From the IMG/VR virus record IMGVR_UViG_3300027573_000779, positions 1 through 64,000 of that record: a stretch of DNA of 64,000 bases. One strand, 5' to 3'. Position 1 is the stretch's first letter, and each line of letters begins with the position of its first letter. The notes under the pieces are model-generated. The model searched no databases, had not been told where the DNA came from, and was given only the letters and a program-made list of their open reading frames with translations. Shown piece after piece: positions 2,905 to 30,608 of this stretch. The position numbers and the translations under genes are program-made.

Positions 2905-2981
2905 TGGTACTCCCGTTGGGACTTGCACCCAAATTTGTCTACTTAGAAGGTAGATGCCTCATCTATTTCGGCCACAGGAGC
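2905..2981 (-). tRNA. tRNA-Arg(UCU) with non-canonical elbow (A18, G55)
   Basis: GCTCCTG/CGGGAGT acceptor, TCTAC-CTTCTAA-GTAGA anticodon arm, TTGGG-TGCAAGT-CCCAA T arm, encoded CCA, A20. Confidence 0.92.
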
Positions 2982-12466: not shown

Positions 12467-12775
12467 CTATTTTAAACTCAATAATCTTTTACAACATTCA
12501 TCAATGGGATTAGCAGCTTGGGCTATCTCTGGATGACGTTCAATTAAAATTGCACAACAAAGTTTCCATTCTTCAACATGACTGCCGCCTAACATTTCTA
12601 GTTCTCGAACTATTCCTTCAAACTTAAGACAGTCATTAAGCCAAGCATTACATAAAAGGTCGCAATAATCAATTGAATACCCCGCTTCCTTTACAAGCTC
12701 GAAAATCATATCCAAAGGAAGTCCATGAGTGTCTTTTAGCTGAAAAACACCTTTGAAGAGTAGTTTGTCTTGCAT
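12467..12775 (-). CDS. Stand-alone fragment resembling the alanyl-tRNA synthetase tRNA-recognition helical domain
   Basis: GVFQLKDTHGLPLDMIFELVKEAGYSID matches the AlaRS AFxLYDT(Y/H)GFPxDLTxxIxxExGxxVD motif. Confidence 0.65.
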   Translation of the reverse strand: MQDKLLFKGVFQLKDTHGLPLDMIFELVKEAGYSIDYCDLLCNAWLNDCLKFEGIVRELEMLGGSHVEEWKLCCAILIERHPEIAQAANPIDECCKRLLSLK

Positions 12776-12996: not shown

Positions 12997-13070
12997 TGGC
13001 AGGCACAGTTGGTTACGCTCCAACGCCCCATGGTCCAAAGCCACGTACGCTACTATTACGCCATGTGCCA
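12997..13070 (-). tRNA. tRNA-Gln(UUG) with A18, A54, G55, U58 and a U1.U72 mismatch
   Basis: TGGCACA/TGTGCCT acceptor, CGTGG-CTTTGGA-CCATG anticodon arm, GTTGG-AGCGTAA-CCAAC T arm, GCCA. Confidence 0.9.
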
Positions 13071-14809: not shown

Positions 14810-15574
14810 TCAACCAGTGATTTTAGAGCGCGAAGTTGAAAGATTTTGTAAAGCCTCCTGTTCAGAAAGCCCTTTTAATTTTTCATCAAGAACGTTTTTG
14901 CTCCCTTTTTTGTTCTTATCGTCATCCAATAAGGCTATTTCAAGGTCCGCAAACGATTGATTGAGTTTGATTTGAACACTTTCTAGGGCAGTTTCAATAC
15001 AAATCTTATCAAAAGTGTCCCCTTCAATTTCTCCTGCCGCTTCGTTCATAGCCGCCGCCGCACAAGCCATCTTCCATTTCTTTTCTGTGCGTTTGATTGT
15101 CTCCGCAAAGTCCTGAAGAGTTACTTGGGCATCCTGATACACCCCTTGCCGATGTTCAAGCAATTGTCTCATTTTGGCCAACCGTTCTTTATAAACATCA
15201 GCGTCTTCAAGCCCGTCCTTCACGTATTGTTTAACTTGGTCCGCAAAAGTTAAAACCTGTGCCGAAAACTTACTAATATTTTCTTTATATTGGGCGAGCG
15301 CGTCTTGTTTCTTTATATACTGATTTTGTAATGTTTCAACGGGGTTTTTAGCGGACTCAGCTTTTAAGGCTTTTATACGCCAGTTTGCCATCTTCATTGC
15401 AAAGTATGGCAGAAAATTGATAATTCCCCAAGATATCCCGCCAGCAACCAAAAGACCAAATAATCCTTGAATGCTTAAAAAAACAAATGGAGCTACAAAA
15501 ACTCCTAGCACCCCAAGACCAATTACCTTCACTAATAATTCTATCCGTTTTCGTTTTTGTTCTAGGTCAGTCAT
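14810..15574 (-). CDS. Two-TM protein with long coiled coil (PspA/IM30-like architecture)
   Basis: Two N-terminal TM helices followed by ~170 aa of heptad helix ending KKWKMACAAAAMNEAAG. Confidence 0.55.
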   Translation of the reverse strand: MTDLEQKRKRIELLVKVIGLGVLGVFVAPFVFLSIQGLFGLLVAGGISWGIINFLPYFAMKMANWRIKALKAESAKNPVETLQNQYIKKQDALAQYKENISKFSAQVLTFADQVKQYVKDGLEDADVYKERLAKMRQLLEHRQGVYQDAQVTLQDFAETIKRTEKKWKMACAAAAMNEAAGEIEGDTFDKICIETALESVQIKLNQSFADLEIALLDDDKNKKGSKNVLDEKLKGLSEQEALQNLSTSRSKITG

Positions 15575-15948
15575 ATGTTTTGTAAAGATTTATATTTAAG
15601 TCTAATCAGTTCATCTAACGCTTTGCTTTGAACAATGGTTCCAGTTTCCCATCTTTTAACGCTTGCTACGCCAACATGTAAAAAACGCGCAAATTCTATT
15701 TGGGATAAATCTAATGAATTTCGAATTGCCAAAATCTCTTTTCCTGTTAAGAGATTTTGTTTTAGTCTATAAGCATCTACCGTATTCTTTCTTAATTCGT
15801 CTGCTTGTTCAAAGGTCACAGTTTTATATCCACACATAGTACATTCTTCGGCAGACGTAACAACTTCAAACTTTTCCCCATGAAACTCTTGTAAAATTGG
15901 GGCCTTCACTGTTTTAAACTCAGTATTGTTACAATCTAAACATATCAT
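15571..15948 (-). CDS. MqsA-like antitoxin (zinc ribbon + XRE HTH)
   Basis: CLDC...HGEKFEV...CTMCG zinc ribbon; IRNSLDLSQIEFARFLHVGVASVKRWETG HTH. Confidence 0.8.
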   Translation of the reverse strand: MICLDCNNTEFKTVKAPILQEFHGEKFEVVTSAEECTMCGYKTVTFEQADELRKNTVDAYRLKQNLLTGKEILAIRNSLDLSQIEFARFLHVGVASVKRWETGTIVQSKALDELIRLKYKSLQNI

Positions 15949-16835: not shown

Positions 16836-17063
16836 TCAAACTTGTTTGTTTAAATTTTTAATAATAGCTCGAACAAGTCTAGGTTCCGCACGAACATATT
16901 GACAAGCCAAACATTCACAGGTCCAATCTTTTTTCTTGTGAAAAGCGTCAATAACATGCATTGTGCCAAGTACGTCTAAACCTACGTTACGAACTTTAGA
17001 TAAAGCTAGTTCTTCTTGTTGTTCTGGTGTCATAAAAAATGGAGCCAAAGATAGGATTTGCAC
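16836..17063 (-). CDS. Hypothetical protein
   Basis: ORF track; CECLAC motif; start may be at the internal MTPEQ. Confidence 0.55.
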   Translation of the reverse strand: MQILSLAPFFMTPEQQEELALSKVRNVGLDVLGTMHVIDAFHKKKDWTCECLACQYVRAEPRLVRAIIKNLNKQV

Positions 17064-17123
17064 CTACAAATGAGAATTCACAAAATTCTTCCTGTTCTAG
17101 TTGAGGCACTTCGGCAATAAAAC

Positions 17124-17199
17124 TGGAACGGTAGACAAGATTCGCACTTGCGTAAAGGTTGGTTGGAAGCCAACTGCCTGACTTCTAGGCTACTACCGC
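17124..17199 (-). tRNA. tRNA-Gly(UCC) with A18 and G55
   Basis: GCGGTAG/CTACCGT acceptor, GTTGG-CTTCCAA-CCAAC anticodon arm, T loop TGCGAAT, U73-CCA. Confidence 0.92.
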
Positions 17200-17215
17200 A
17201 TTGAAAATTCAAAAA

Positions 17216-17299
17216 GGGGTCAGGATACCAATCTGCCTTATTTCATTCGACAGTGACCCTCAAGCTTTCTAAAGGGTCTTCCAACCGGAACCCTGACCC
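17216..17299 (-). ncRNA. Three-way-junction RNA, copy A
   Basis: GGGTCAGG/CCTGACCC; GACCC-TTTAGAAAGCTTGA-GGGTC; CTGTC-GAATGAAATAA-GGCAG. Confidence 0.7.
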
Positions 17300-17301
17300 G
17301 A

Positions 17302-17375
17302 AAAGGACATTAACTGTCTTATTTCATTCAACAGCACCCCTCAGTTTCCAAAGGGGTTCGTTACGAATGTCCTTT
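17302..17375 (-). ncRNA. Three-way-junction RNA, copy B
   Basis: AAAGGACAT/ATGTCCTTT; ACCCC-TTTGGAAACTGA-GGGGT; CTGTT-GAATGAAATAA-GACAG. Confidence 0.7.
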
Positions 17376-17499
17376 AAAATTGAAGAGGGGCAACCTAACG
17401 TCATCAGATAACCCCAATCACTAACGTTGCGTTAATGAGAAGTAAATTAAAACAACCTTGGGATTTCACGAGCGTTCCAATGTCTATCCAAGGTTTACT

Positions 17500-18287
17500 A
17501 AGTCTGAGACTACAACTTAGATTACTAGTCTTTCCGAAGATTATCAAGGCTTTGCGAGCCTCTTTCCTCCGTTATCCTCATAAACCCTTTAATGGCATCT
17601 ATGAACCTAGCATGGCTGCATTTTTACAGGTTGCATTTCCTGCTACCCATCACTCTACTCGATGTTCACTTTCTGTCTAGCTTGCGGCCAGTTAAGGATT
17701 ATTAGTCCAACATGCAGCGAAACAATCAACTAAATCACCCCTTGCGAGGGCAATCCAGTCTCCATTACCTTGCGGCAGGAGAATTAAGCCACTTTCGAGT
17801 GACAGAGGAAACGTCTTTGCTTTTTATATCATAGAACGATATGTTGGGATTACACCAACGCATCTAACAGCGACGTGCGTTTCCTGTCGTTTCATATCCT
17901 TTTGGGATACAAAATGCGACACGCCGCTTGCCTTTCATCTTGCAGACTACTCAACCAGATTACTCGACTTTGGATAACTTTTTAAGGGTTATCCATTACC
18001 GTTTAACCTTGCTATTAAGCCCTTGCTTGCATGGCTTGAACTTAATAACTCCTCTTTGTCCTTAGCTGTCGCTGTTTGGCATGATAATATATTAGATTGC
18101 GAGTCTAATACCCCTACTCACCGATTGGCTCTGTAGGTTTAACTATCCAGCTTCCAGTTACCTCACGTTATCGTAAGGTCTCAGGACTGAGTTTGCCTGA
18201 ATATCCCTTTGGAAAGGGCGCGAGGTTAGTTAGCACCTTCGCCTTTCGCCGTCTTGCGACGGGTTATTTAACGTGGTCAGGCCCACA
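17500..18287 (-). ncRNA. GOLLD-like giant ornate ncRNA (~790 nt)
   Basis: ORF-free, many GNRA-capped hairpins (GTC-GCAA-GAC, CCCTC-GCAA-GGGG, CACTC-GAAA-GTG), 5' loop GCCTGA complementary to TCAGGC, 3' GAGTAG...GATAATC...GAAAGACTAG...GTAGTCTCAG as recalled for GOLLD; located within a tRNA cluster. Confidence 0.7.
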
Positions 18288-18305
18288 AAATCTACAAATT
18301 AAAAT

Positions 18306-18410
18306 ACCTAAGTTCAGGTCGCTCAATATACGGTATGACCGATTGAAACAGTTAGCTATGCTGCTCCAAGTTGCCGGAATGACCCGATTTTATGCCCTCA
18401 ACGCTTAGGT
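18306..18410 (-). ncRNA. Closed ~105-nt structured domain directly 3' of tRNA-Leu
   Basis: ACCTAAG/CTTAGGT closing stem, TTCCGG-CAAC-TTGGAG hairpin; starts 3 nt after the CCA. Confidence 0.4.
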
Positions 18411-18413
18411 AAA

Positions 18414-18490
18414 TGGTCCCTCTGGCCGTGGTTGCAACGGCACTGTCAAGCTTTTAAGGCTCGCGTCTCCTGCTCTTGGACTACAGAGGG
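18414..18490 (-). tRNA. tRNA-Leu(UAA) lacking the long variable arm; A18, G55
   Basis: CCCTCTG/CAGAGGG acceptor, CGAGC-CTTAAAA-GCTTG anticodon arm, 5-nt variable loop, GCCGT-TGCAACC-ACGGC T arm, ACCA. Confidence 0.87.
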
Positions 18491-18495
18491 TAAAA

Positions 18496-18570
18496 TGGTG
18501 CGGAAAGGGAGAAGTCGCACTCCCACCTTAAACTTGGCAAGTTCACGTTCTACTACTAAACTACTTCCGC
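18496..18570 (-). tRNA. tRNA-Gly(GCC) with A18, G55, an 8-nt T loop and A73
   Basis: GCGGAAG/TTTCCGC acceptor, TGAAC-TTGCCAA-GTTTA anticodon arm, GGGAG-TGCGACTT-CTCCC T arm. Confidence 0.87.
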
Positions 18571-19100
18571 ATTTTTAAGGCTTGTCTCGCATTTTTAATC
18601 TCTTCTTCAAAATTTTTAATCTCTTCTTCTAAATCCTCAAACTCTTGATGTGCTAAGATATGACATTTCCTGCAAAGAGTCTTTAAATCTTTAACGGTTG
18701 TATCGTAAAGGTTCCTATAAACCAAATGGTGGGGTTCAACCCTAGAAGGAGACCCGCATTTTTCACAAACCGGATTGAGCTTTAACTTCTCTCTTCTCAA
18801 AGCGAACCAATGTTCCGATTTCAGATACTCGGTTCTATAGTATTCCCTTTTATCATTAACGGGATGTTCCCCACGGATTGGGGTATCGTGATAAACGCCC
18901 AGTGAGCGAGGAATCTTAAACTTAGATTTCAGCCTTCTGTTTATCTTCTTGTTGAAGATTCTCATCCCTTCCCAATCAAACCCTCTCTTCTTTTTTCGTT
19001 TTATAACGCCTTTAGGTAACATAAAGTAATGGGATTTTTTCCCTACCTCCGTTGGTAGCACCAATGTCTCCATTGATACCGGCGTCTCCGAACTTCCCAC
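18561..19100 (-). CDS. HNH endonuclease (true start likely MLPKG at ~19022)
   Basis: CEKCG...EPHHLVY...DLKTLCRKCHILAH. Confidence 0.85.
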   Translation of the reverse strand: MGSSETPVSMETLVLPTEVGKKSHYFMLPKGVIKRKKKRGFDWEGMRIFNKKINRRLKSKFKIPRSLGVYHDTPIRGEHPVNDKREYYRTEYLKSEHWFALRREKLKLNPVCEKCGSPSRVEPHHLVYRNLYDTTVKDLKTLCRKCHILAHQEFEDLEEEIKNFEEEIKNARQALKMRK

Positions 19101-19170: not shown

Positions 19171-19198
19171 ATGCTATCAAAACTTTTTCAAATGTCAA
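19171..19198 (-). promoter_or_regulatory. Sigma70-type promoter TTGACA-N16-TAGCAT for the HNH/tRNA/GOLLD unit
   Basis: TTGACAtttgaaaaagttttgaTAGCAT, just downstream of a terminator. Confidence 0.6.
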
Positions 19199-19413: not shown

Positions 19414-19911
19414 TTACAATTCTTTGCCATCCAACCCCACAAGAGTTGAAACCCTCTTCCAACCATACGTTTTCATCTGTTCTTCATTCATGGTGTCAAG
19501 GCTGGCTTCGGGACTAATCACAAAAATGGAAATATTCTTCTCTCGTATGGTTTTTAGATATTTTTTGACAATAATTTCAAGAGAATAAGCTGATTGTTGA
19601 GCGTATTGAGGGTCGATTCTAAGAACGACCAAGCTGTTAGGTTCAATCTCATCTATCTTGATTATCTTATCTAACTTTAGACCAATTTCAACGTCTGTCT
19701 CTTGTTTAAGCCAACGAATAAATTTATCTTGAACATCCTGTGAGACCCCTTGCCCCTTCATTAATTCTTCGACAGAAGCATATCTTCTCCCGGTAGGTTT
19801 AATTTCTTCTGGATTTTTTAAAGGATGATTATCGTTCAGAGGATTTTCACATCCTACATCGTCATCTTCTGTTGTTCGGCCCATATAAATTCTTTCTTTA
19901 TTATGCTGCAA
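19414..19911 (-). CDS. Hypothetical protein
   Basis: ORF track; follows the PurA-like gene. Confidence 0.6.
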   Translation of the reverse strand: MQHNKERIYMGRTTEDDDVGCENPLNDNHPLKNPEEIKPTGRRYASVEELMKGQGVSQDVQDKFIRWLKQETDVEIGLKLDKIIKIDEIEPNSLVVLRIDPQYAQQSAYSLEIIVKKYLKTIREKNISIFVISPEASLDTMNEEQMKTYGWKRVSTLVGLDGKEL

Positions 19912-21241
19912 CCATCTCTTTTTTCAAGTTTAAAAAAGACATCTTATCGTTTGCCATTTCCCCATAAGATTTAATACCTATAGGGACATTTAACATATCA
20001 GTAAGAATATTAGGAATTGCTTCCCCTTCTACTTTTTCCGATTCACAATTAACTTTACCGAGAGTTTTACCTAGTTCTTCCTGATTAACTAAAAATGACA
20101 TATGGGGTTTTTTAAGTTCCCAAAGTTTTCCATTTAAATTATAGCCAGTGTTAATATACCATGGATTGATTTCATTAATTCTATCACAATGAGAAACCGC
20201 CAAATAATCTACCCCACCGTTAACTTCTAGGGCATATTTTAAAAGGGGAATATCTAACATGCCCGTTCTAAATCTTCCTTGCCATGGACCAGTTGTATTA
20301 GCTGTGTCTTGTAAATTCCAAGGCATTTCAGTTGGAAAAGGTCCTGCGCCGTGTCTGGTGGCATAAATTCTAGTTACACCAATCTCAACAATGTTAGATT
20401 CTAATAACCCCAAGCCAGCTTCATTTAAAACCTTATATACGTTTTCTGTGGTTGTATTACTCCAAGTTGTGTGGGGGTGAAAACCCCATTTTTCATCTAG
20501 TAATATGCCTTGAGCGCCCTCAAAAACAGGATTATTGGAACCTTTTAGCAATTCTGAAACCTGTTGAGCGTCTATGATGTTAATTTTTTTGCTTAATTCC
20601 TGATATTCTTTAGCTATACGGTCAGTAAAACGCAAATCTCTGAAAAACTTAGCATGAGAACCTATAAAATTATAGAAATCAACCCCTTCCCTGTCTAGGC
20701 GCGAAATCATCGCCCTAAAGGTAAGCCAAAGCTTTTCATGGGTAATATCATAATTCTTAAGGTCTTTAACCCGTAAAACATTATCTCTCTTTAAACTGTC
20801 TAAAACTGTTTCTCCAATCCCCACTCCACACGAGCCATGACGATTATTGTTTCTACTCTCTTCTAACATCCTGTTAGCCGCAACATGAAATGGGGTAGTA
20901 ACCAAAGCTCGTTCATCTACATAAATTGATTCAAAGTTTCCCCCTTTGCGCCAAGTATTTGCACTTAAAACCTCTTCTTCTTTTATTAAGGATAAGGGGT
21001 TAAATAAAACGTGCTTAGTGAGTAATGTTTTAACGTTCCGATTGACTAAAGTTCCACTGCCAAACTGAGCAAAAACGTGAGAGTCGCCACTTGAAGTAAC
21101 AACTCTGTGGGCACATTGAGCGCCGCCATTATATCTGATAACTAAATCAGAATTGTTTTGACGGACAAGAAAGTCAACAACACTTCCTTTTGTTTCGTCG
21201 CCGTGTTGCAGACCCACAACTATGAAAACATTTTTGTCCAT
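19901..21241 (-). CDS. Divergent adenylosuccinate synthetase-like protein (start revised to MDKNV)
   Basis: GDETKG, RYNGGAQCAH, FEGAQGILLD, TRHGAGPFPTE, GRFRTG. Confidence 0.9.
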   Translation of the reverse strand: MDKNVFIVVGLQHGDETKGSVVDFLVRQNNSDLVIRYNGGAQCAHRVVTSSGDSHVFAQFGSGTLVNRNVKTLLTKHVLFNPLSLIKEEEVLSANTWRKGGNFESIYVDERALVTTPFHVAANRMLEESRNNNRHGSCGVGIGETVLDSLKRDNVLRVKDLKNYDITHEKLWLTFRAMISRLDREGVDFYNFIGSHAKFFRDLRFTDRIAKEYQELSKKINIIDAQQVSELLKGSNNPVFEGAQGILLDEKWGFHPHTTWSNTTTENVYKVLNEAGLGLLESNIVEIGVTRIYATRHGAGPFPTEMPWNLQDTANTTGPWQGRFRTGMLDIPLLKYALEVNGGVDYLAVSHCDRINEINPWYINTGYNLNGKLWELKKPHMSFLVNQEELGKTLGKVNCESEKVEGEAIPNILTDMLNVPIGIKSYGEMANDKMSFLNLKKEMVAA

Positions 21242-21310
21242 AAATTTGAAAAAAAGGGAGAGGAAAGGCAACCATAACCATTCCTCTCCCGGTGTGCGAA
21301 CCCGAACCAA

Positions 21311-27228: not shown

Positions 27229-27882
27229 TTATAATTGATGAAGAAGTCCTCCGGGTCTTTGTTGCCCCTTTATAGTCTTCATGATTTGTTTATCTATCAT
27301 ATCACCAAGAAGAAGCTCTTTTGCTTTTCTTTTTAAATATTTTCTTCTTTGTTTTGTCGCTTCATACAATACTATACCCGTAGAAGTGCCTAAATTCAAG
27401 CTTTCAATTATCCCACACATGGGAATATTAATGCAACACTCACTGTTATCTATTGCGGCCTGACTAACACCCTGACTTTCGTTGCCGAACCAAATTGCCA
27501 GTTTCTTATGAGTGTAATCCCCTTCCTCTAAAATAACATTCTTTTTACCCTTAAGGTGTGGAGAGGTCACCATTGATACAAACCCTTTACTATTAAGATA
27601 TTTTATACATGAATCGGTGTCGGGATAACACTTAACAAAAGCCCATTTAATAGCAGAAACAGAAATTTTGTTTAAAGAGCCTGTTTCTCTCATTGTCTGC
27701 CAATATGCAGGTAAAAGTCTATACCCATCAACGACATATAGTTTTTGAACTCCTAGAGCGTCAATGTTACGGACCACTGAGCCGATGTTTTCAATCGTCT
27801 TGGGATTTTCCAAAACGGCAATTAAGTTCTTACAGCGTAATTGCTTTGCTCTATCAGCTTTCAGACGAAGATTGGTCTTCAT
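27229..27882 (-). CDS. SpoU/TrmH-family RNA 2'-O-methyltransferase
   Basis: VLENPKTIENIGSVVR (motif 1), FGNESQG (motif 2), IPMCGIIESLN (motif 3). Confidence 0.9.
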   Translation of the reverse strand: MKTNLRLKADRAKQLRCKNLIAVLENPKTIENIGSVVRNIDALGVQKLYVVDGYRLLPAYWQTMRETGSLNKISVSAIKWAFVKCYPDTDSCIKYLNSKGFVSMVTSPHLKGKKNVILEEGDYTHKKLAIWFGNESQGVSQAAIDNSECCINIPMCGIIESLNLGTSTGIVLYEATKQRRKYLKRKAKELLLGDMIDKQIMKTIKGQQRPGGLLHQL

Positions 27883-28560: not shown

Positions 28561-28775
28561 ATTTCACCTTTCCAACAAATCTTATTTGCGCGTTCAGCAG
28601 CTTTCTTTTTTGAAATATCTTCTTGTATTTTTTTCATACACTTTTTCGCATCTTCTTCCCTTCTCAACGTGCAAAACCCATAGGTCCACGTGTCAAAATC
28701 GTGCCACATTCCAAACTCACGAAACTGAGGAAGATAAACTTCCCGATAAACGTCGTAAAAGATTCTTACTTTCAT
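28557..28775 (-). CDS. Hypothetical protein
   Basis: ORF track. Confidence 0.55.
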   Translation of the reverse strand: MKVRIFYDVYREVYLPQFREFGMWHDFDTWTYGFCTLRREEDAKKCMKKIQEDISKKKAAERANKICWKGEI

Positions 28776-29869
28776 ACCGCGACCTCTCCTTTTATAGCTG
28801 GATGTGGGTCGTAGCCCTCTAACCTAATATCCTCATACTTGAAATCAAAAAGGTCTCGCTTATCGGGGTTGAGCCATAAGCGGGGTAAAGGTTTAGGCTC
28901 GCGGCTTAGTTGCTCATTTACCTGCTCTTTATGATTCTCATAAATATGCAAATCTCCATAGGTATGAATGAAAGTTCCCGGCTGCATATTAACACAATGG
29001 GCGACCATTGCTAATAGGAGACTATAAGATGTGATGTTGAATGGCACGCCTAGGAAAGTATCACAGCTTCTTTGATAGAGTAGAAGATTAAGACGGCGAC
29101 TTGGAACACCCATTCTATTTAAAGCCTCTTCTTGCTCTTGAATAGTATGGTAACCTACTTGGCCCCACGAGCCTTCTTTTTGTTTGTAAGTGGGGTTTTT
29201 AAAAGATAGCTCAAATCTTTCGTCGTGTGTTAGTTCCTCAGTATGAAACTGAAACAAGCAATGGCACGGCGGCAGCGCACATTTCTCGACCCAATAAGGA
29301 TGCCATGCACTTACTATCATGCGGCGGTCATCGGGGTTAGTCTTGAGTTTGTCGAGGACTTTCTGGAGTTGGTCTACCTCTCCCTTCAGTCCTTGTTCAA
29401 CACAATTCTCATAAAAATATGGAAATGCTCGCCACATCCCACCATAAGTTCCTTCGCCTAATTCTCCATGCTCGGCAGCAAATTTTTCGTCATTCTTTAT
29501 TCTCTCTAAGAACTTATCCATAGATAAAGCTCTTCCGTGTTCGTCGCCATCCCATTTAAAAATACCAGTAAGAGTTGGAAACTTTTCAGCATACCTCTTA
29601 TAGGGCCAAGAATTCCAAATATGAACGTCATTATCCACCAAATACTTAATGTTGGTATCTCCCCGTATGAACCATAACAGTTCGTGAACAACGCCTTTAA
29701 ACCACACCTTCTTAGTTGTTAATATAGGAAACTCCTCAAAACTAACAGGAAACTTCGCCTGCTCCCCAAACACTCCTACAGTATTTATCCCCGTCCGGTT
29801 CTTCTTAACCGTTCCCTTTTCCAGAATAGTATTTAAAAGTCTAAAATATTCCTTGTCAGTATTATTCAT
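28772..29869 (-). CDS. thyA: Thymidylate synthase
   Basis: ALPPCHCLFQF, YQRSCDTFLGVPFN, YGDLHIYENH. Confidence 0.96.
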   Translation of the reverse strand: MNNTDKEYFRLLNTILEKGTVKKNRTGINTVGVFGEQAKFPVSFEEFPILTTKKVWFKGVVHELLWFIRGDTNIKYLVDNDVHIWNSWPYKRYAEKFPTLTGIFKWDGDEHGRALSMDKFLERIKNDEKFAAEHGELGEGTYGGMWRAFPYFYENCVEQGLKGEVDQLQKVLDKLKTNPDDRRMIVSAWHPYWVEKCALPPCHCLFQFHTEELTHDERFELSFKNPTYKQKEGSWGQVGYHTIQEQEEALNRMGVPSRRLNLLLYQRSCDTFLGVPFNITSYSLLLAMVAHCVNMQPGTFIHTYGDLHIYENHKEQVNEQLSREPKPLPRLWLNPDKRDLFDFKYEDIRLEGYDPHPAIKGEVAV

Positions 29870-30608
29870 ATTCTGGAATCATCGTAAGTAATTGTTCGTT
29901 TTTTTTAAAATCCCAAGCGCCTTTGGCGACTAATTGTCCTCTTTCATCTTCCGCGCCCGAAAATTCCCTATAAACAATTCGGCCATTTTTTTGACCGTCA
30001 CTTAAATCTCTTGCCCAATTAATACCTATTTCATGTAACATTTCGTGCATATCTGATTGACTTTTCTTATGTAATTGATTAGGTAAAAAATAATATTGTG
30101 CCAACATTGAAATTGAATTTCTAACACAGTCCTGCTGCCGCCACCTAAAATAGTTCATCACTTCAATCCGGTCAGGAATGGTAAAGACGCGACAATCAAA
30201 ATATGCTTGAGTTTGGTCATACCACTGATTTTTTTCATTAAACTGTCTATAAATTCTTCGTTTGTTAAACTCTGCGGTCATTATACTAGCCGCCACAGAA
30301 GTTATCTTTTGTATATTTCCATCAAACCAAGCACAAGAATCGATATTTTCAAAATCAGTCACCAAAATACTTATTTCGTCTGACTGATTATAAGCAAAAA
30401 CCACACCCTGAATATTAGGAAATAAAGCTAATGTAGCCTCATCCAAATCATTCATTAGCCCGTTATCAAAAGGTTTCAGTAACCCTCTGGTATAGGTATG
30501 AAAAGCTTTCCCATCTAAACGAAGGATAGTATAAGTGCGCCGAGGAAGACTGTAACGAGTTCTGTCTTCGTACTGCTCCTTCATCCTTTGACCGAACAAA
30601 TCATTCAT
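29862..30608 (-). CDS. Thg1-like tRNA(His) guanylyltransferase / 3'-5' polymerase (TLP)
   Basis: ILRLDGKAFH, YNQSDEIS, FDCRVF, RQQDCVRNS. Confidence 0.92.
   Translation of the reverse strand: MNDLFGQRMKEQYEDRTRYSLPRRTYTILRLDGKAFHTYTRGLLKPFDNGLMNDLDEATLALFPNIQGVVFAYNQSDEISILVTDFENIDSCAWFDGNIQKITSVAASIMTAEFNKRRIYRQFNEKNQWYDQTQAYFDCRVFTIPDRIEVMNYFRWRQQDCVRNSISMLAQYYFLPNQLHKKSQSDMHEMLHEIGINWARDLSDGQKNGRIVYREFSGAEDERGQLVAKGAWDFKKNEQLLTMIPEYE

What the first reader, a model, noticed from the sequence alone, without database searches (positions are those of the whole stretch)
17216..17375. Tandem pair of covarying three-way-junction RNAs with T-loop-like conserved loops
Seen: two adjacent units whose three stems differ in sequence but all pair, while the loops TTT(A/G)GAAA(G)CT(T)GA and GAATGAAATAA are conserved; G.U pairs favour the minus strand. 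They lie between the GOLLD-like RNA and tRNA-Gly. Known: interdigitated T-loop pairs (UGAAA-like) bind tRNA elbows in T-boxes, RNase P and the L1 stalk. Inference: a possibly unnamed small RNA class that may bind tRNA elbows, which would tie in with the rewired elbows.
Basis: partly seen in the sequence, partly recalled or inferred. Interest (0 to 1): 0.75.

Follow-up and report, generated by a model that had tools for sequence, protein, structure and literature searches.

The report
Orphan tRNA-sized RNA pair in phage
Two neighbouring, tRNA-sized RNA genes of an unknown kind sit between a giant GOLLD RNA and tRNA genes in an uncultured 209-kb groundwater phage; their folds are well supported, but they have no relatives anywhere I could search, so their function, perhaps tRNA-related, is still a guess.

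Summary
On the minus strand, unit A (17375-17302, 74 nt) and unit B (17299-17217, 83 nt) lie 2 nt apart.

All 22-23 aligned base pairs form in both copies. Of these, 11-13 differ on both sides and 2 differ by G.U pairs that work only on the minus strand. P1 shares 2 of 18 letters, yet loop L4 (GAAUGAAAUAA) is identical and L3 nearly so. That pattern points to selection on both fold and loops.

No Rfam family matches, even at E<=10. ARAGORN calls no tRNA here. The only copies are these two, in this one phage. Exact and relaxed loop patterns in viral, metagenome and genome collections gave no hit with stems. Covariance models found nothing in 119 GOLLD loci or 9 whole GOLLD-carrying large phage records (168-483 kb).

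The tRNA-elbow idea is untested. The published AGNNA...UGNNA double T-loop signature fits unit B fully and unit A at 5 of 6 positions, but chance gives that in 4-22% of loops. One new lead: L3 of unit A and of unit B complement the anticodon loops of phage tRNA-Gly(UCC) and tRNA-Arg(UCU) respectively.

Verdict: a real, unnamed, orphan structured RNA pair, probably tRNA-related.

The parts
17302..17375 (-). Unit A, 74 nt. P1 17375-17367 with 17310-17302; P2 17366-17364 with 17360-17358; P3 17357-17353 with 17340-17336; loop L3 17352-17341 (UUUGGAAACUGA); P4 17334-17330 with 17318-17314; loop L4 17329-17319 (GAAUGAAAUAA); linker 17313-17311.
   Evidence: Fold z -4.72; segmentation and pair table; covariance models
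17217..17299 (-). Unit B, 83 nt. P1 17299-17291 with 17225-17217; P2 17290-17287 with 17282-17279; P3 17278-17274 with 17259-17255; loop L3 17273-17260 (UUUAGAAAGCUUGA); P4 17253-17249 with 17237-17233; loop L4 17248-17238 (GAAUGAAAUAA); linker 17232-17226.
   Evidence: Fold z -4.95; pair table; found by the unit A model at E 1.9e-6
17376..17500 (-). Spacer between the GOLLD 3' end and unit A, with three predicted hairpins. Its role is unknown, and it is not certain that it belongs to the same functional RNA.
   Evidence: Fold z -3.25; no Rfam match
17501..17929 (-). Conserved 3' domain of a GOLLD RNA, immediately upstream of the units on the same strand. Its variable 5' half probably extends towards 18413.
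   Evidence: Rfam RF02032, 194.3 bits, E 3e-53, full model
17124..17199 (-). tRNA-Gly(UCC), 17 nt downstream of unit B. Its anticodon loop CUUCCAA is complementary over 6 nt to L3 of unit A.
   Evidence: ARAGORN and Rfam; complementarity
17040..17115 (-). tRNA-His(GUG) with encoded CCA, the last RNA gene of the array.
   Evidence: Rfam tRNA 43.7 bits; sequence read; missed by ARAGORN
18414..18570 (-). tRNA-Gly(GCC) 18570-18496 and tRNA-Leu(UAA) 18490-18414, at the head of the array upstream of GOLLD.
19171..19198 (-). Sigma-70-like promoter candidate (TTGACA, 16 nt, TAGCAT, with TG) that could drive the HNH gene and the whole RNA array. No terminator-like site was found on the minus strand between the GOLLD 3' end (17501) and 17040.
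   Evidence: Consensus scan only
2905..2981 (-). tRNA-Arg(UCU). Its anticodon loop CUUCUAA is complementary over 6 nt to L3 of unit B. This is a possible partner and a lead only.

Best explanation
These are two paralogous, tRNA-sized non-coding RNAs (74 and 83 nt) on the minus strand, inside a phage RNA array: tRNA-Gly, tRNA-Leu, GOLLD, spacer, unit A, unit B, tRNA-Gly, tRNA-His.

Each folds into a four-helix junction in cloverleaf order: closing stem P1, mini-hairpin P2, and 5-bp hairpins P3 and P4. The working surface is the two sequence-conserved loops L3 and L4.

Most likely course of events:
1. They are transcribed together with the array.
2. They are cut out by the nucleases that process the flanking tRNAs. 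They are packed like tRNA genes, 2 and 17 nt from their neighbours.
3. P3 and P4 lie side by side, so L3 and L4 form one compact knob.
4. The RNAs act in trans on tRNAs or on tRNA-handling machinery.

Shown: the fold (covariation between the copies), the strand, the array context, the constraint on the loops, and the absence from all described families. Inferred: co-transcription, excision, loop-loop docking and the link to tRNA biology. Whether the knob stacks on tRNA elbows, mimics an elbow, or uses L3 to pair with an anticodon loop is open.
For: Fold and covariation.

Reciprocal detection by single-copy models, with no other hit in the genome.

Constraint on the loops: P1 keeps 2 of 18 letters while L4 keeps 11 of 11, and L3 differs by one substitution plus a 2-nt indel.

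Context: same strand and tight spacing inside a tRNA/GOLLD array, with no terminator-like site between the GOLLD 3' end and the last tRNA. In 23 of 119 other GOLLD loci a same-strand tRNA starts 9-72 nt after GOLLD, so this position is normally held by tRNAs.

Loops: they carry the RGAAA...UGAAA T-loop-like pentamers. L3 complements the anticodon loops of two phage tRNAs.

The phage is invested in tRNA biology: 7 tRNAs, 5 of them with the unusual T-loop UGCRA, plus Thg1-like and SpoU-like genes.
Against: There are only two sequences, both from one genome, so covariation rests on a single comparison of paralogues. No orthologue exists to confirm which features are conserved.

There is no expression data: no RNA run was listed.

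The units are not tRNA-like by any scoring tool. ARAGORN calls nothing there, and there is no tRNA model match even at E<=10. They lack the encoded CCA that all seven real tRNAs of this phage have, and a 3-7 nt linker interrupts the P4-to-P1 stack that RNase P normally reads.

The T-loop signature and the anticodon complementarity are each weak statistically and were noticed after the fact.
Confidence: 0.4

Rival explanations
1. [quoted passage not shown] The resulting flat platform stacks on tRNA elbows, perhaps the phage's own non-canonical ones.
For: Unit B shows the AGNNA...UGNNA signature in the published 5'-to-3' order, and unit A matches 5 of 6 positions. P3 and P4 are equal-length neighbours joined by 1 nt, so side-by-side loops are geometrically possible (inference). 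Five of seven phage tRNAs have UGCRA T-loops and lack the D-loop GG.
Against: Unit A has G where the signature needs A. The signature is expected in 4-5% of random loop pairs and about 22% of composition-matched ones. In T-box Stem I and RNase P the two T-loops lie within one helical stack (a bulge plus an apical loop, or an internal-loop module), not in two apical hairpin loops, and the L1 stalk differs again. No structure or binding data exist, and there are no relatives to test conservation.
Confidence: 0.12
2. tRNA-like punctuation. The units are processing signals, that is substrates of RNase P or of 3' trimming enzymes. They define the 3' end of GOLLD and separate it from the downstream tRNAs, as tRNAs do in other GOLLD loci and as the mascRNA element does for MALAT1. 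They have no trans function of their own.
For: GOLLD is directly followed by a tRNA in 23 of 119 loci; here the units take that place. The helix order is cloverleaf-like with a 9-bp acceptor-like closing stem, and the spacing is tRNA-like.
Against: A punctuation role does not explain why 11- and 12-14-nt loop sequences are conserved while the stems drift, or why two copies are kept next to two real tRNAs that could do the job. There is no tRNA model score. A linker lies between P4 and P1.
Confidence: 0.18
3. The units are not separate RNAs. They are a lineage-specific 3' accessory domain of this phage's GOLLD RNA, for example decorating the GOLLD nanocage or tethering cargo.
For: Same strand, 125 nt after the GOLLD model end, with no terminator-like site between them. 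The cryo-EM preprint notes that tRNAs are sometimes covalently embedded in GOLLD and suggests tRNA cargo (10.1101/2024.12.08.627333).
Against: The Rfam GOLLD model ends at 17501 with a full-length match. Nothing similar follows GOLLD in 119 other loci. Each unit is closed by its own P1, as an independent module would be.
Confidence: 0.12
4. Degenerate or remodelled tRNA paralogues, such as pseudo-tRNAs or decoys for a host factor, that keep only the overall cloverleaf.
For: Size, helix order and location in a tRNA array. P3 and P4 have 5-bp stems like anticodon and T stems. L3 of unit B contains UAGAA, as do the D-loops of tRNA-Gly(UCC) and tRNA-His, and L4 contains UGAAA, which resembles the phage T-loops UGCRA.
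Against: There is no detectable sequence or model similarity to tRNA. There is no 7-nt anticodon loop and no CCA. Loop conservation between the copies argues against decay.
Confidence: 0.1
5. Tandem ligand-binding aptamers (a riboswitch) or another cis-regulator of downstream genes.
For: Tandem, similar, multi-helix junctions with conserved unpaired nucleotides are typical of some riboswitches. In unit B, P1 is followed by UUUUUGAAUUUU.
Against: What follows is two tRNA genes, not an mRNA leader. Unit A has no expression platform. There is no Rfam riboswitch match. The terminator scan finds nothing here.
Confidence: 0.05

Closest known systems
[quoted passage not shown] 2013, PMC3664808)
   Same: Two conserved unpaired stretches, each carrying a T-loop-like pentamer, in the order (A/G)GAAA then UGAAA. 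Unit B fits AGNNA...UGNNA exactly.
   Different: Unit A has G at the first position. Here the pentamers sit in two apical hairpin loops of a small four-way junction. There is no structural evidence of interdigitation and no evidence of tRNA binding. The signature is not rare by chance.
tRNA (Rfam RF00005)
   Same: 74-83 nt; a closing stem plus three hairpins in cloverleaf order; 5-bp second and third hairpin stems; located in a tRNA gene array with tRNA-like spacing.
   Different: 9-bp closing stem, tiny first hairpin, loops of 12-14 and 11 nt instead of 7 and 7, a 3-7 nt linker before the 3' strand of P1, no CCA, no anticodon loop. Not detected by ARAGORN or by the tRNA model even at E<=10.
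Stable small RNAs of unknown function encoded in the phage T4 tRNA gene cluster (species 1 and 2 RNAs; from my own knowledge, not checked here)
   Same: Small structured RNAs of unknown function, co-located and presumably co-processed with phage tRNAs.
   Different: No sequence or structural similarity was tested or is claimed. The T4 RNAs are longer and are not tandem paralogues.
T-box riboswitch (Rfam RF00230)
   Same: As a working analogy only: one conserved loop could read an anticodon (the L3 complementarity) and T-loop-like elements could touch the tRNA body.
   Different: No Rfam match. Far too small (74-83 nt against about 200-300). No antiterminator. Not in an mRNA leader. The complementarity is 6 nt of the anticodon loop rather than a 3-nt specifier, and it overlaps the putative T-loop pentamer, so both readings cannot hold at once.
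GOLLD RNA (Rfam RF02032)
   Same: Immediate neighbour on the same strand. Both occur next to tRNAs in phage genomes.
   Different: The units lie outside the GOLLD model, which ends at 17501, and are absent from 119 other GOLLD loci.

Membership tests
Any Rfam 15 family (4227 models) | Covariance-model score at or above the gathering threshold, or at least a weak match | tested here: not met
   No match on the units at gathering score, at E<=10 over 16900-18700, or at E<=10 over 17205-17385 alone.
tRNA | Detected by tRNA finders and models: 7-bp acceptor stem, D arm, 7-nt anticodon loop, 7-nt T-loop | tested here: not met
   ARAGORN finds nothing at 17216-17375 and there is no RF00005 match at E<=10. 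The loops are 3-4, 12-14 and 11 nt.
tRNA | 3' CCA, encoded in all seven real tRNAs of this phage | tested here: not met
   Unit A is followed by UC and then unit B. Unit B is followed by CUUUUUGAAUUUU.
[quoted passage not shown] | Sequence signature AGNNA ... UGNNA (six near-invariant residues) | tested here: inconclusive
   Unit B has AGAAA...UGAAA (6 of 6). Unit A has GGAAA...UGAAA (5 of 6) (definition). The chance rate is 4-22% depending on the null model.
[quoted passage not shown] | Reciprocal intercalation of the two T-loops, forming two stacked base triples and a flat platform | not testable with these tools
   This needs a 3D structure or mutate-and-probe data.
[quoted passage not shown] | Stacks on the tRNA elbow (the G19:C56 platform) | not testable with these tools
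   This needs binding assays. Note that most tRNAs of this phage lack the canonical elbow nucleotides.
T-box riboswitch | Stem I with a specifier loop, an antiterminator with the T-box sequence, and location in an mRNA leader | tested here: not met
   No RF00230 match. tRNA genes follow the units, not an ORF leader.
GOLLD RNA | Lies within the conserved GOLLD architecture and recurs in other GOLLD loci | tested here: not met
   The full-length model match ends at 17501. Models R1 and R3 find nothing significant in 119 GOLLD loci or in 9 whole GOLLD-carrying large phage records of 168-483 kb.
A recurrent RNA class (any new family) | Independent members in other genomes that show covariation | tested here: not met
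   Only the window's own contig has the loops together with the stems. The other samples hold the identical phage, with no variants.

The most novel reading that the evidence does not exclude
The units are sequence-specific tRNA clamps, each dedicated to one phage tRNA. L3 of unit A (UUGGAA) pairs with nt 33-38 of the anticodon loop of tRNA-Gly(UCC). L3 of unit B (UUAGAA) pairs with the same positions of tRNA-Arg(UCU). The one G/A difference between the loops tracks C36/U36. L4 supplies a T-loop-type contact.

This would be a minimal, trans-acting counterpart of T-box tRNA recognition. It is encoded next to GOLLD and might sequester these two tRNAs, chaperone them, or load them into the GOLLD cage. 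They read the phage's commonest Arg and Gly codons.
Probability: 0.1. Interest if true: 0.85.

Novelty: new variant of a known kind. Interest (0 to 1): 0.45.

Why it matters
If these are real small RNAs, they add an undescribed, tRNA-sized fold to the RNAs that large phages carry next to tRNAs and GOLLD.

GOLLD has no known function, although it assembles into a 14-mer cage and has been suggested to carry tRNAs. A small RNA with tRNA-directed loops, encoded at its 3' end in a phage whose own tRNAs have non-canonical elbows, would give a concrete and testable handle on that question.

The limit is severe: two copies, one uncultured phage, no host, no expression data.

Tried and rejected
Searches for relatives, all negative:
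- BLASTN of 16900-18700 against GenBank phages: no match.
- Exact two-loop pattern: 0 hits in IMG/VR, 41 in metagenomes and 22 in genomes. Only the window's own contig has P3 and P4 stems; the rest are chance hits in A/T-rich DNA.
- Two relaxed loop patterns in IMG/VR: 187 hits, none with stems.
- L4 plus the outer P4 pairs only: 5 hits. The best (L378, 20 bits) is a lone hairpin next to a promoter-like site, with fold z -0.3 and no P3, so I rejected it as chance.
- Models R1 (unit A) and R3 (both units) against 119 GOLLD loci: best E 0.39-1.2, and the top R3 hit looks like an ordinary tRNA (acceptor and T-arm sequence; not confirmed with a tRNA finder). Nothing in 9 whole GOLLD-carrying large phage records.
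- A home-made descriptor (P1 + P3 + P4 with RGNNA and UGNNA loops) over 3.2 Mb of fetched loci: 77 hits against 105 in reversed controls, so no enrichment.

Searches for related phages:
- The PurZ-like protein has no relative above 43% identity among 5.8 billion proteins.
- tBLASTN with two neighbouring proteins found only distant phages.
- The other assemblies are the same phage at 99.98-100% identity, with no variants in the array.
- No RNA sequencing run was listed.

Readings considered and rejected:
- A DNA-level repeat: rejected because of strand-specific G.U pairs and energies.
- A coding region: the only ORF is a 52-aa GTG frame on the opposite strand.
- An intrinsic terminator at unit B's P1 plus U-run: the scan finds none, and a 65-nt branched loop is atypical.
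- A third degenerate unit in 17376-17500: no model hit.
- Enrichment across the whole array of hexamers complementary to phage anticodon loops: 10 observed against about 6.6 expected, so no enrichment.

Full report
**What the window is.** The window is the first 64 kb of a 208,933-bp IMG/VR virus record. CheckV rates it 100% complete and its GC content is 37%. The same phage, 99.98-100% identical, occurs in groundwater and freshwater-sediment assemblies. It has no close kin. Its PurZ-like adenylosuccinate synthetase finds nothing above 43% identity among 5.8 billion proteins. BLASTN and tBLASTN against GenBank phages find nothing or only distant hits.

**The array.** Everything around the finding is on the minus strand. 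Reading 5' to 3', the order is:
- a promoter-like site at 19198-19171, then an HNH gene;
- tRNA-Gly(GCC) 18570-18496 and tRNA-Leu(UAA) 18490-18414;
- a GOLLD RNA whose conserved 3' domain matches Rfam RF02032 end to end at 17929-17501 (194 bits);
- a 125-nt spacer with three hairpins;
- unit A (17375-17302), two bases, then unit B (17299-17217);
- 17 bases, then tRNA-Gly(UCC) 17199-17124;
- 8 bases, then tRNA-His(GUG) 17115-17040;
- protein genes.

**Checking the observation.** Each unit has four helices, not three:
- a 9-bp closing stem P1;
- a small hairpin P2 (3-4 bp, loop 3-4 nt);
- P3 (5 bp, loop of 12 or 14 nt);
- one unpaired base;
- P4 (5 bp, loop of 11 nt);
- a 3- or 7-nt linker back to P1.

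Unit B can alternatively pair its longer linker with the P2 region, which gives a three-way look. Unit A cannot, so P2 is the shared solution.

The folds are much more stable than shuffles on the minus strand: z is -4.72 for A and -4.95 for B, with 0 of 200 shuffles as stable. They are less stable on the plus strand.

In a structural alignment, all 22 aligned pairs form in both units. Eleven pairs differ on both sides (8 of 9 in P1, 1 in P2, 2 in P3). Two differ on one side through G.U, both in P4, and these would be A-C mismatches on the other strand. On the model-fitted alignment, 46 of 46 cells pair and 13 pairs change on both sides, whereas sliding the 3' partners by 1-3 columns leaves 38-51% paired. 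A covariance model built from either unit alone finds the other (35.4 and 40.9 bits) and nothing else in the 209-kb genome.

**Why this is more than a drifting duplication.** The periphery is randomised: P1 shares 2 of 18 letters, and the linkers and the P2 loop differ. The core is nearly frozen: L4 is 11 of 11 identical, and L3 has one substitution and a 2-nt indel. If neutral change was enough to erase P1 while every pair was kept, then the identical loops must be under sequence constraint. This is the strongest argument that the loops are the functional surface. It still rests on one comparison of two paralogues.

**Is it known?** No Rfam 15 family matches at gathering score, at E<=10 over 1.8 kb, or at E<=10 over the 181 nt alone. 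ARAGORN calls no tRNA there. The units also lack the encoded CCA that all seven real tRNAs of this phage have.

**Is it a class?** I could not find a single further member.
- The exact two-loop pattern gave 0 hits in IMG/VR. It gave 63 hits in metagenomes and genomes, but only the window's own contig has the flanking stems.
- Two relaxed patterns gave 187 IMG/VR hits without stems.
- L4 with only the outer P4 pairs gave 5 hits, none convincing.
- I fetched 119 GOLLD loci with a GOLLD-specific pattern. Models R1 and R3 found nothing significant in them.
- They also found nothing in nine whole GOLLD-carrying large phage records of 168-483 kb.
- A structural descriptor scan was at background level.

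The collections could be scanned only by exact patterns, not by covariance models. Divergent relatives therefore remain possible.

**Context that bears on function.** In 23 of the 119 GOLLD loci, a same-strand tRNA starts 9-72 nt after the GOLLD 3' end, and the next nearest is more than 1.7 kb away. The slot the units occupy is therefore typically a tRNA slot.

The phage is unusually engaged with tRNAs. It encodes seven. Five of them have the T-loop UGC(A/G)A, with G where U55 is nearly universal, and at least four of those five have no GG in the D-loop. Thg1-like and SpoU-like genes lie within 13 kb.

**The T-loop idea.** Lehmann et al. (PMC3664808) define the elbow-docking module of T-box Stem I, RNase P and the L1 stalk. 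They describe it as two T-loops bound head to tail, with the near-invariant signature AGNNA...UGNNA. Unit B has AGAAA in L3 and UGAAA in L4. Unit A has GGAAA and UGAAA. So the signature is met in one copy and missed by one residue in the other.

Simulation shows that the signature appears in 4-5% of random loop pairs of genome composition and in about 22% of shuffles of these loops. In an antiparallel stacked four-way junction, P3 and P4 would lie side by side with their loops together. Docking is therefore plausible, but this is inference. The hypothesis is neither supported nor excluded.

**A competing lead for L3.** UUGGAA in unit A is the exact complement of positions 33-38 of the anticodon loop of phage tRNA-Gly(UCC). 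UUAGAA in unit B is the exact complement of the same positions of phage tRNA-Arg(UCU). The single G/A difference between the loops matches C36/U36.

The chance of a complement of at least 6 nt to any of the seven anticodon loops is 3.6-5.5% per loop. Only 2 of 18 single substitutions would hit another phage tRNA, which gives roughly 0.5% jointly before allowing for the several things I looked at. These hexamers are not enriched elsewhere in the array, and the duplexes are weak (-5.7 and -3.7 kcal/mol). AGA and GGA are the phage's commonest Arg and Gly codons. This reading uses the same nucleotides as the T-loop reading, so at most one of them is right.

**Conclusion.** This is a real, unnamed pair of structured RNAs of tRNA size and cloverleaf-like helix order, embedded in a tRNA/GOLLD array and with constrained loops. 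Most likely they are excised small RNAs that act on tRNAs or on tRNA-handling machinery (confidence 0.4). The rivals are pure processing punctuation, a GOLLD 3' accessory domain, the specific elbow-binding model, remodelled pseudo-tRNAs, and a riboswitch. The finding stays an orphan until a full covariance-model search or an experiment says otherwise.

Noticed in passing
window 2905-2981, 17040-17115, 17124-17199, 18414-18490, 18496-18570 (all minus strand): Five of the phage's seven tRNAs have the T-loop UGC(A/G)A, with G where U55 is almost universal. At least four of the five have no GG in the D-loop (Leu is ambiguous). tRNA-Met at genome 208779-208855 is canonical.
   Followed up: partly
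window 17040-17115 (-) and 13000-13070 (-): A tRNA-His(GUG) and a tRNA-like sequence with a possible UUG anticodon are found by the Rfam tRNA model (43.7 and 44.3 bits) but missed by ARAGORN. A Thg1-like gene, the enzyme family that adds G-1 to tRNA-His, lies at about 29862-30608 (-).
   Followed up: partly
window 19901-21310 (-): A PurZ-like adenylosuccinate synthetase (Pfam PF00709, 4.7e-62; PHROG 1211 '2-aminooxy adenylosuccinate synthetase', 8.9e-78). This suggests the phage may replace adenine with 2-aminoadenine in its DNA.
   Followed up: no
window 17376-17500 (-): Three predicted hairpins lie between the GOLLD 3' end and unit A (fold z -3.25). The heptamer ACGUUAG occurs in both the second and third hairpins, which allows alternative pairing. 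No Rfam match.
   Followed up: no
loci L003-L121 (IMG/VR GOLLD loci): The distance from the GOLLD 3' end to the next same-strand tRNA is bimodal: 9-72 nt in 23 of 119 loci and more than 1.7 kb otherwise. This is consistent with tRNA processing defining the GOLLD 3' end in a subset of loci.
   Followed up: partly
window 27229-27882 (-), 28772-29869 (-), 12467-12775 (-), 15571-15948 (-): SpoU-family RNA methyltransferase, thymidylate synthase, a small protein with a weak alanyl-tRNA-synthetase-class domain hit, and an MqsA/HTH-like protein all lie near the RNA array. Coordinates are converted from the L187 gene table.
   Followed up: no
window 17284-17279 and 17480-17475 (-): The hexamer UUGGAA, complementary to the tRNA-Gly(UCC) anticodon loop, also occurs in the P2 region of unit B and in the first spacer hairpin. 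That makes three copies in 1.2 kb against 0.9 expected.
   Followed up: partly
window 17220-17256: In one freshwater-sediment run the assembler's contigs break inside unit B (pieces end at 17219 and start at 17257). This may be caused by the near-identical P4/L4 segment repeated in unit A. No sequence variants were seen.
   Followed up: no
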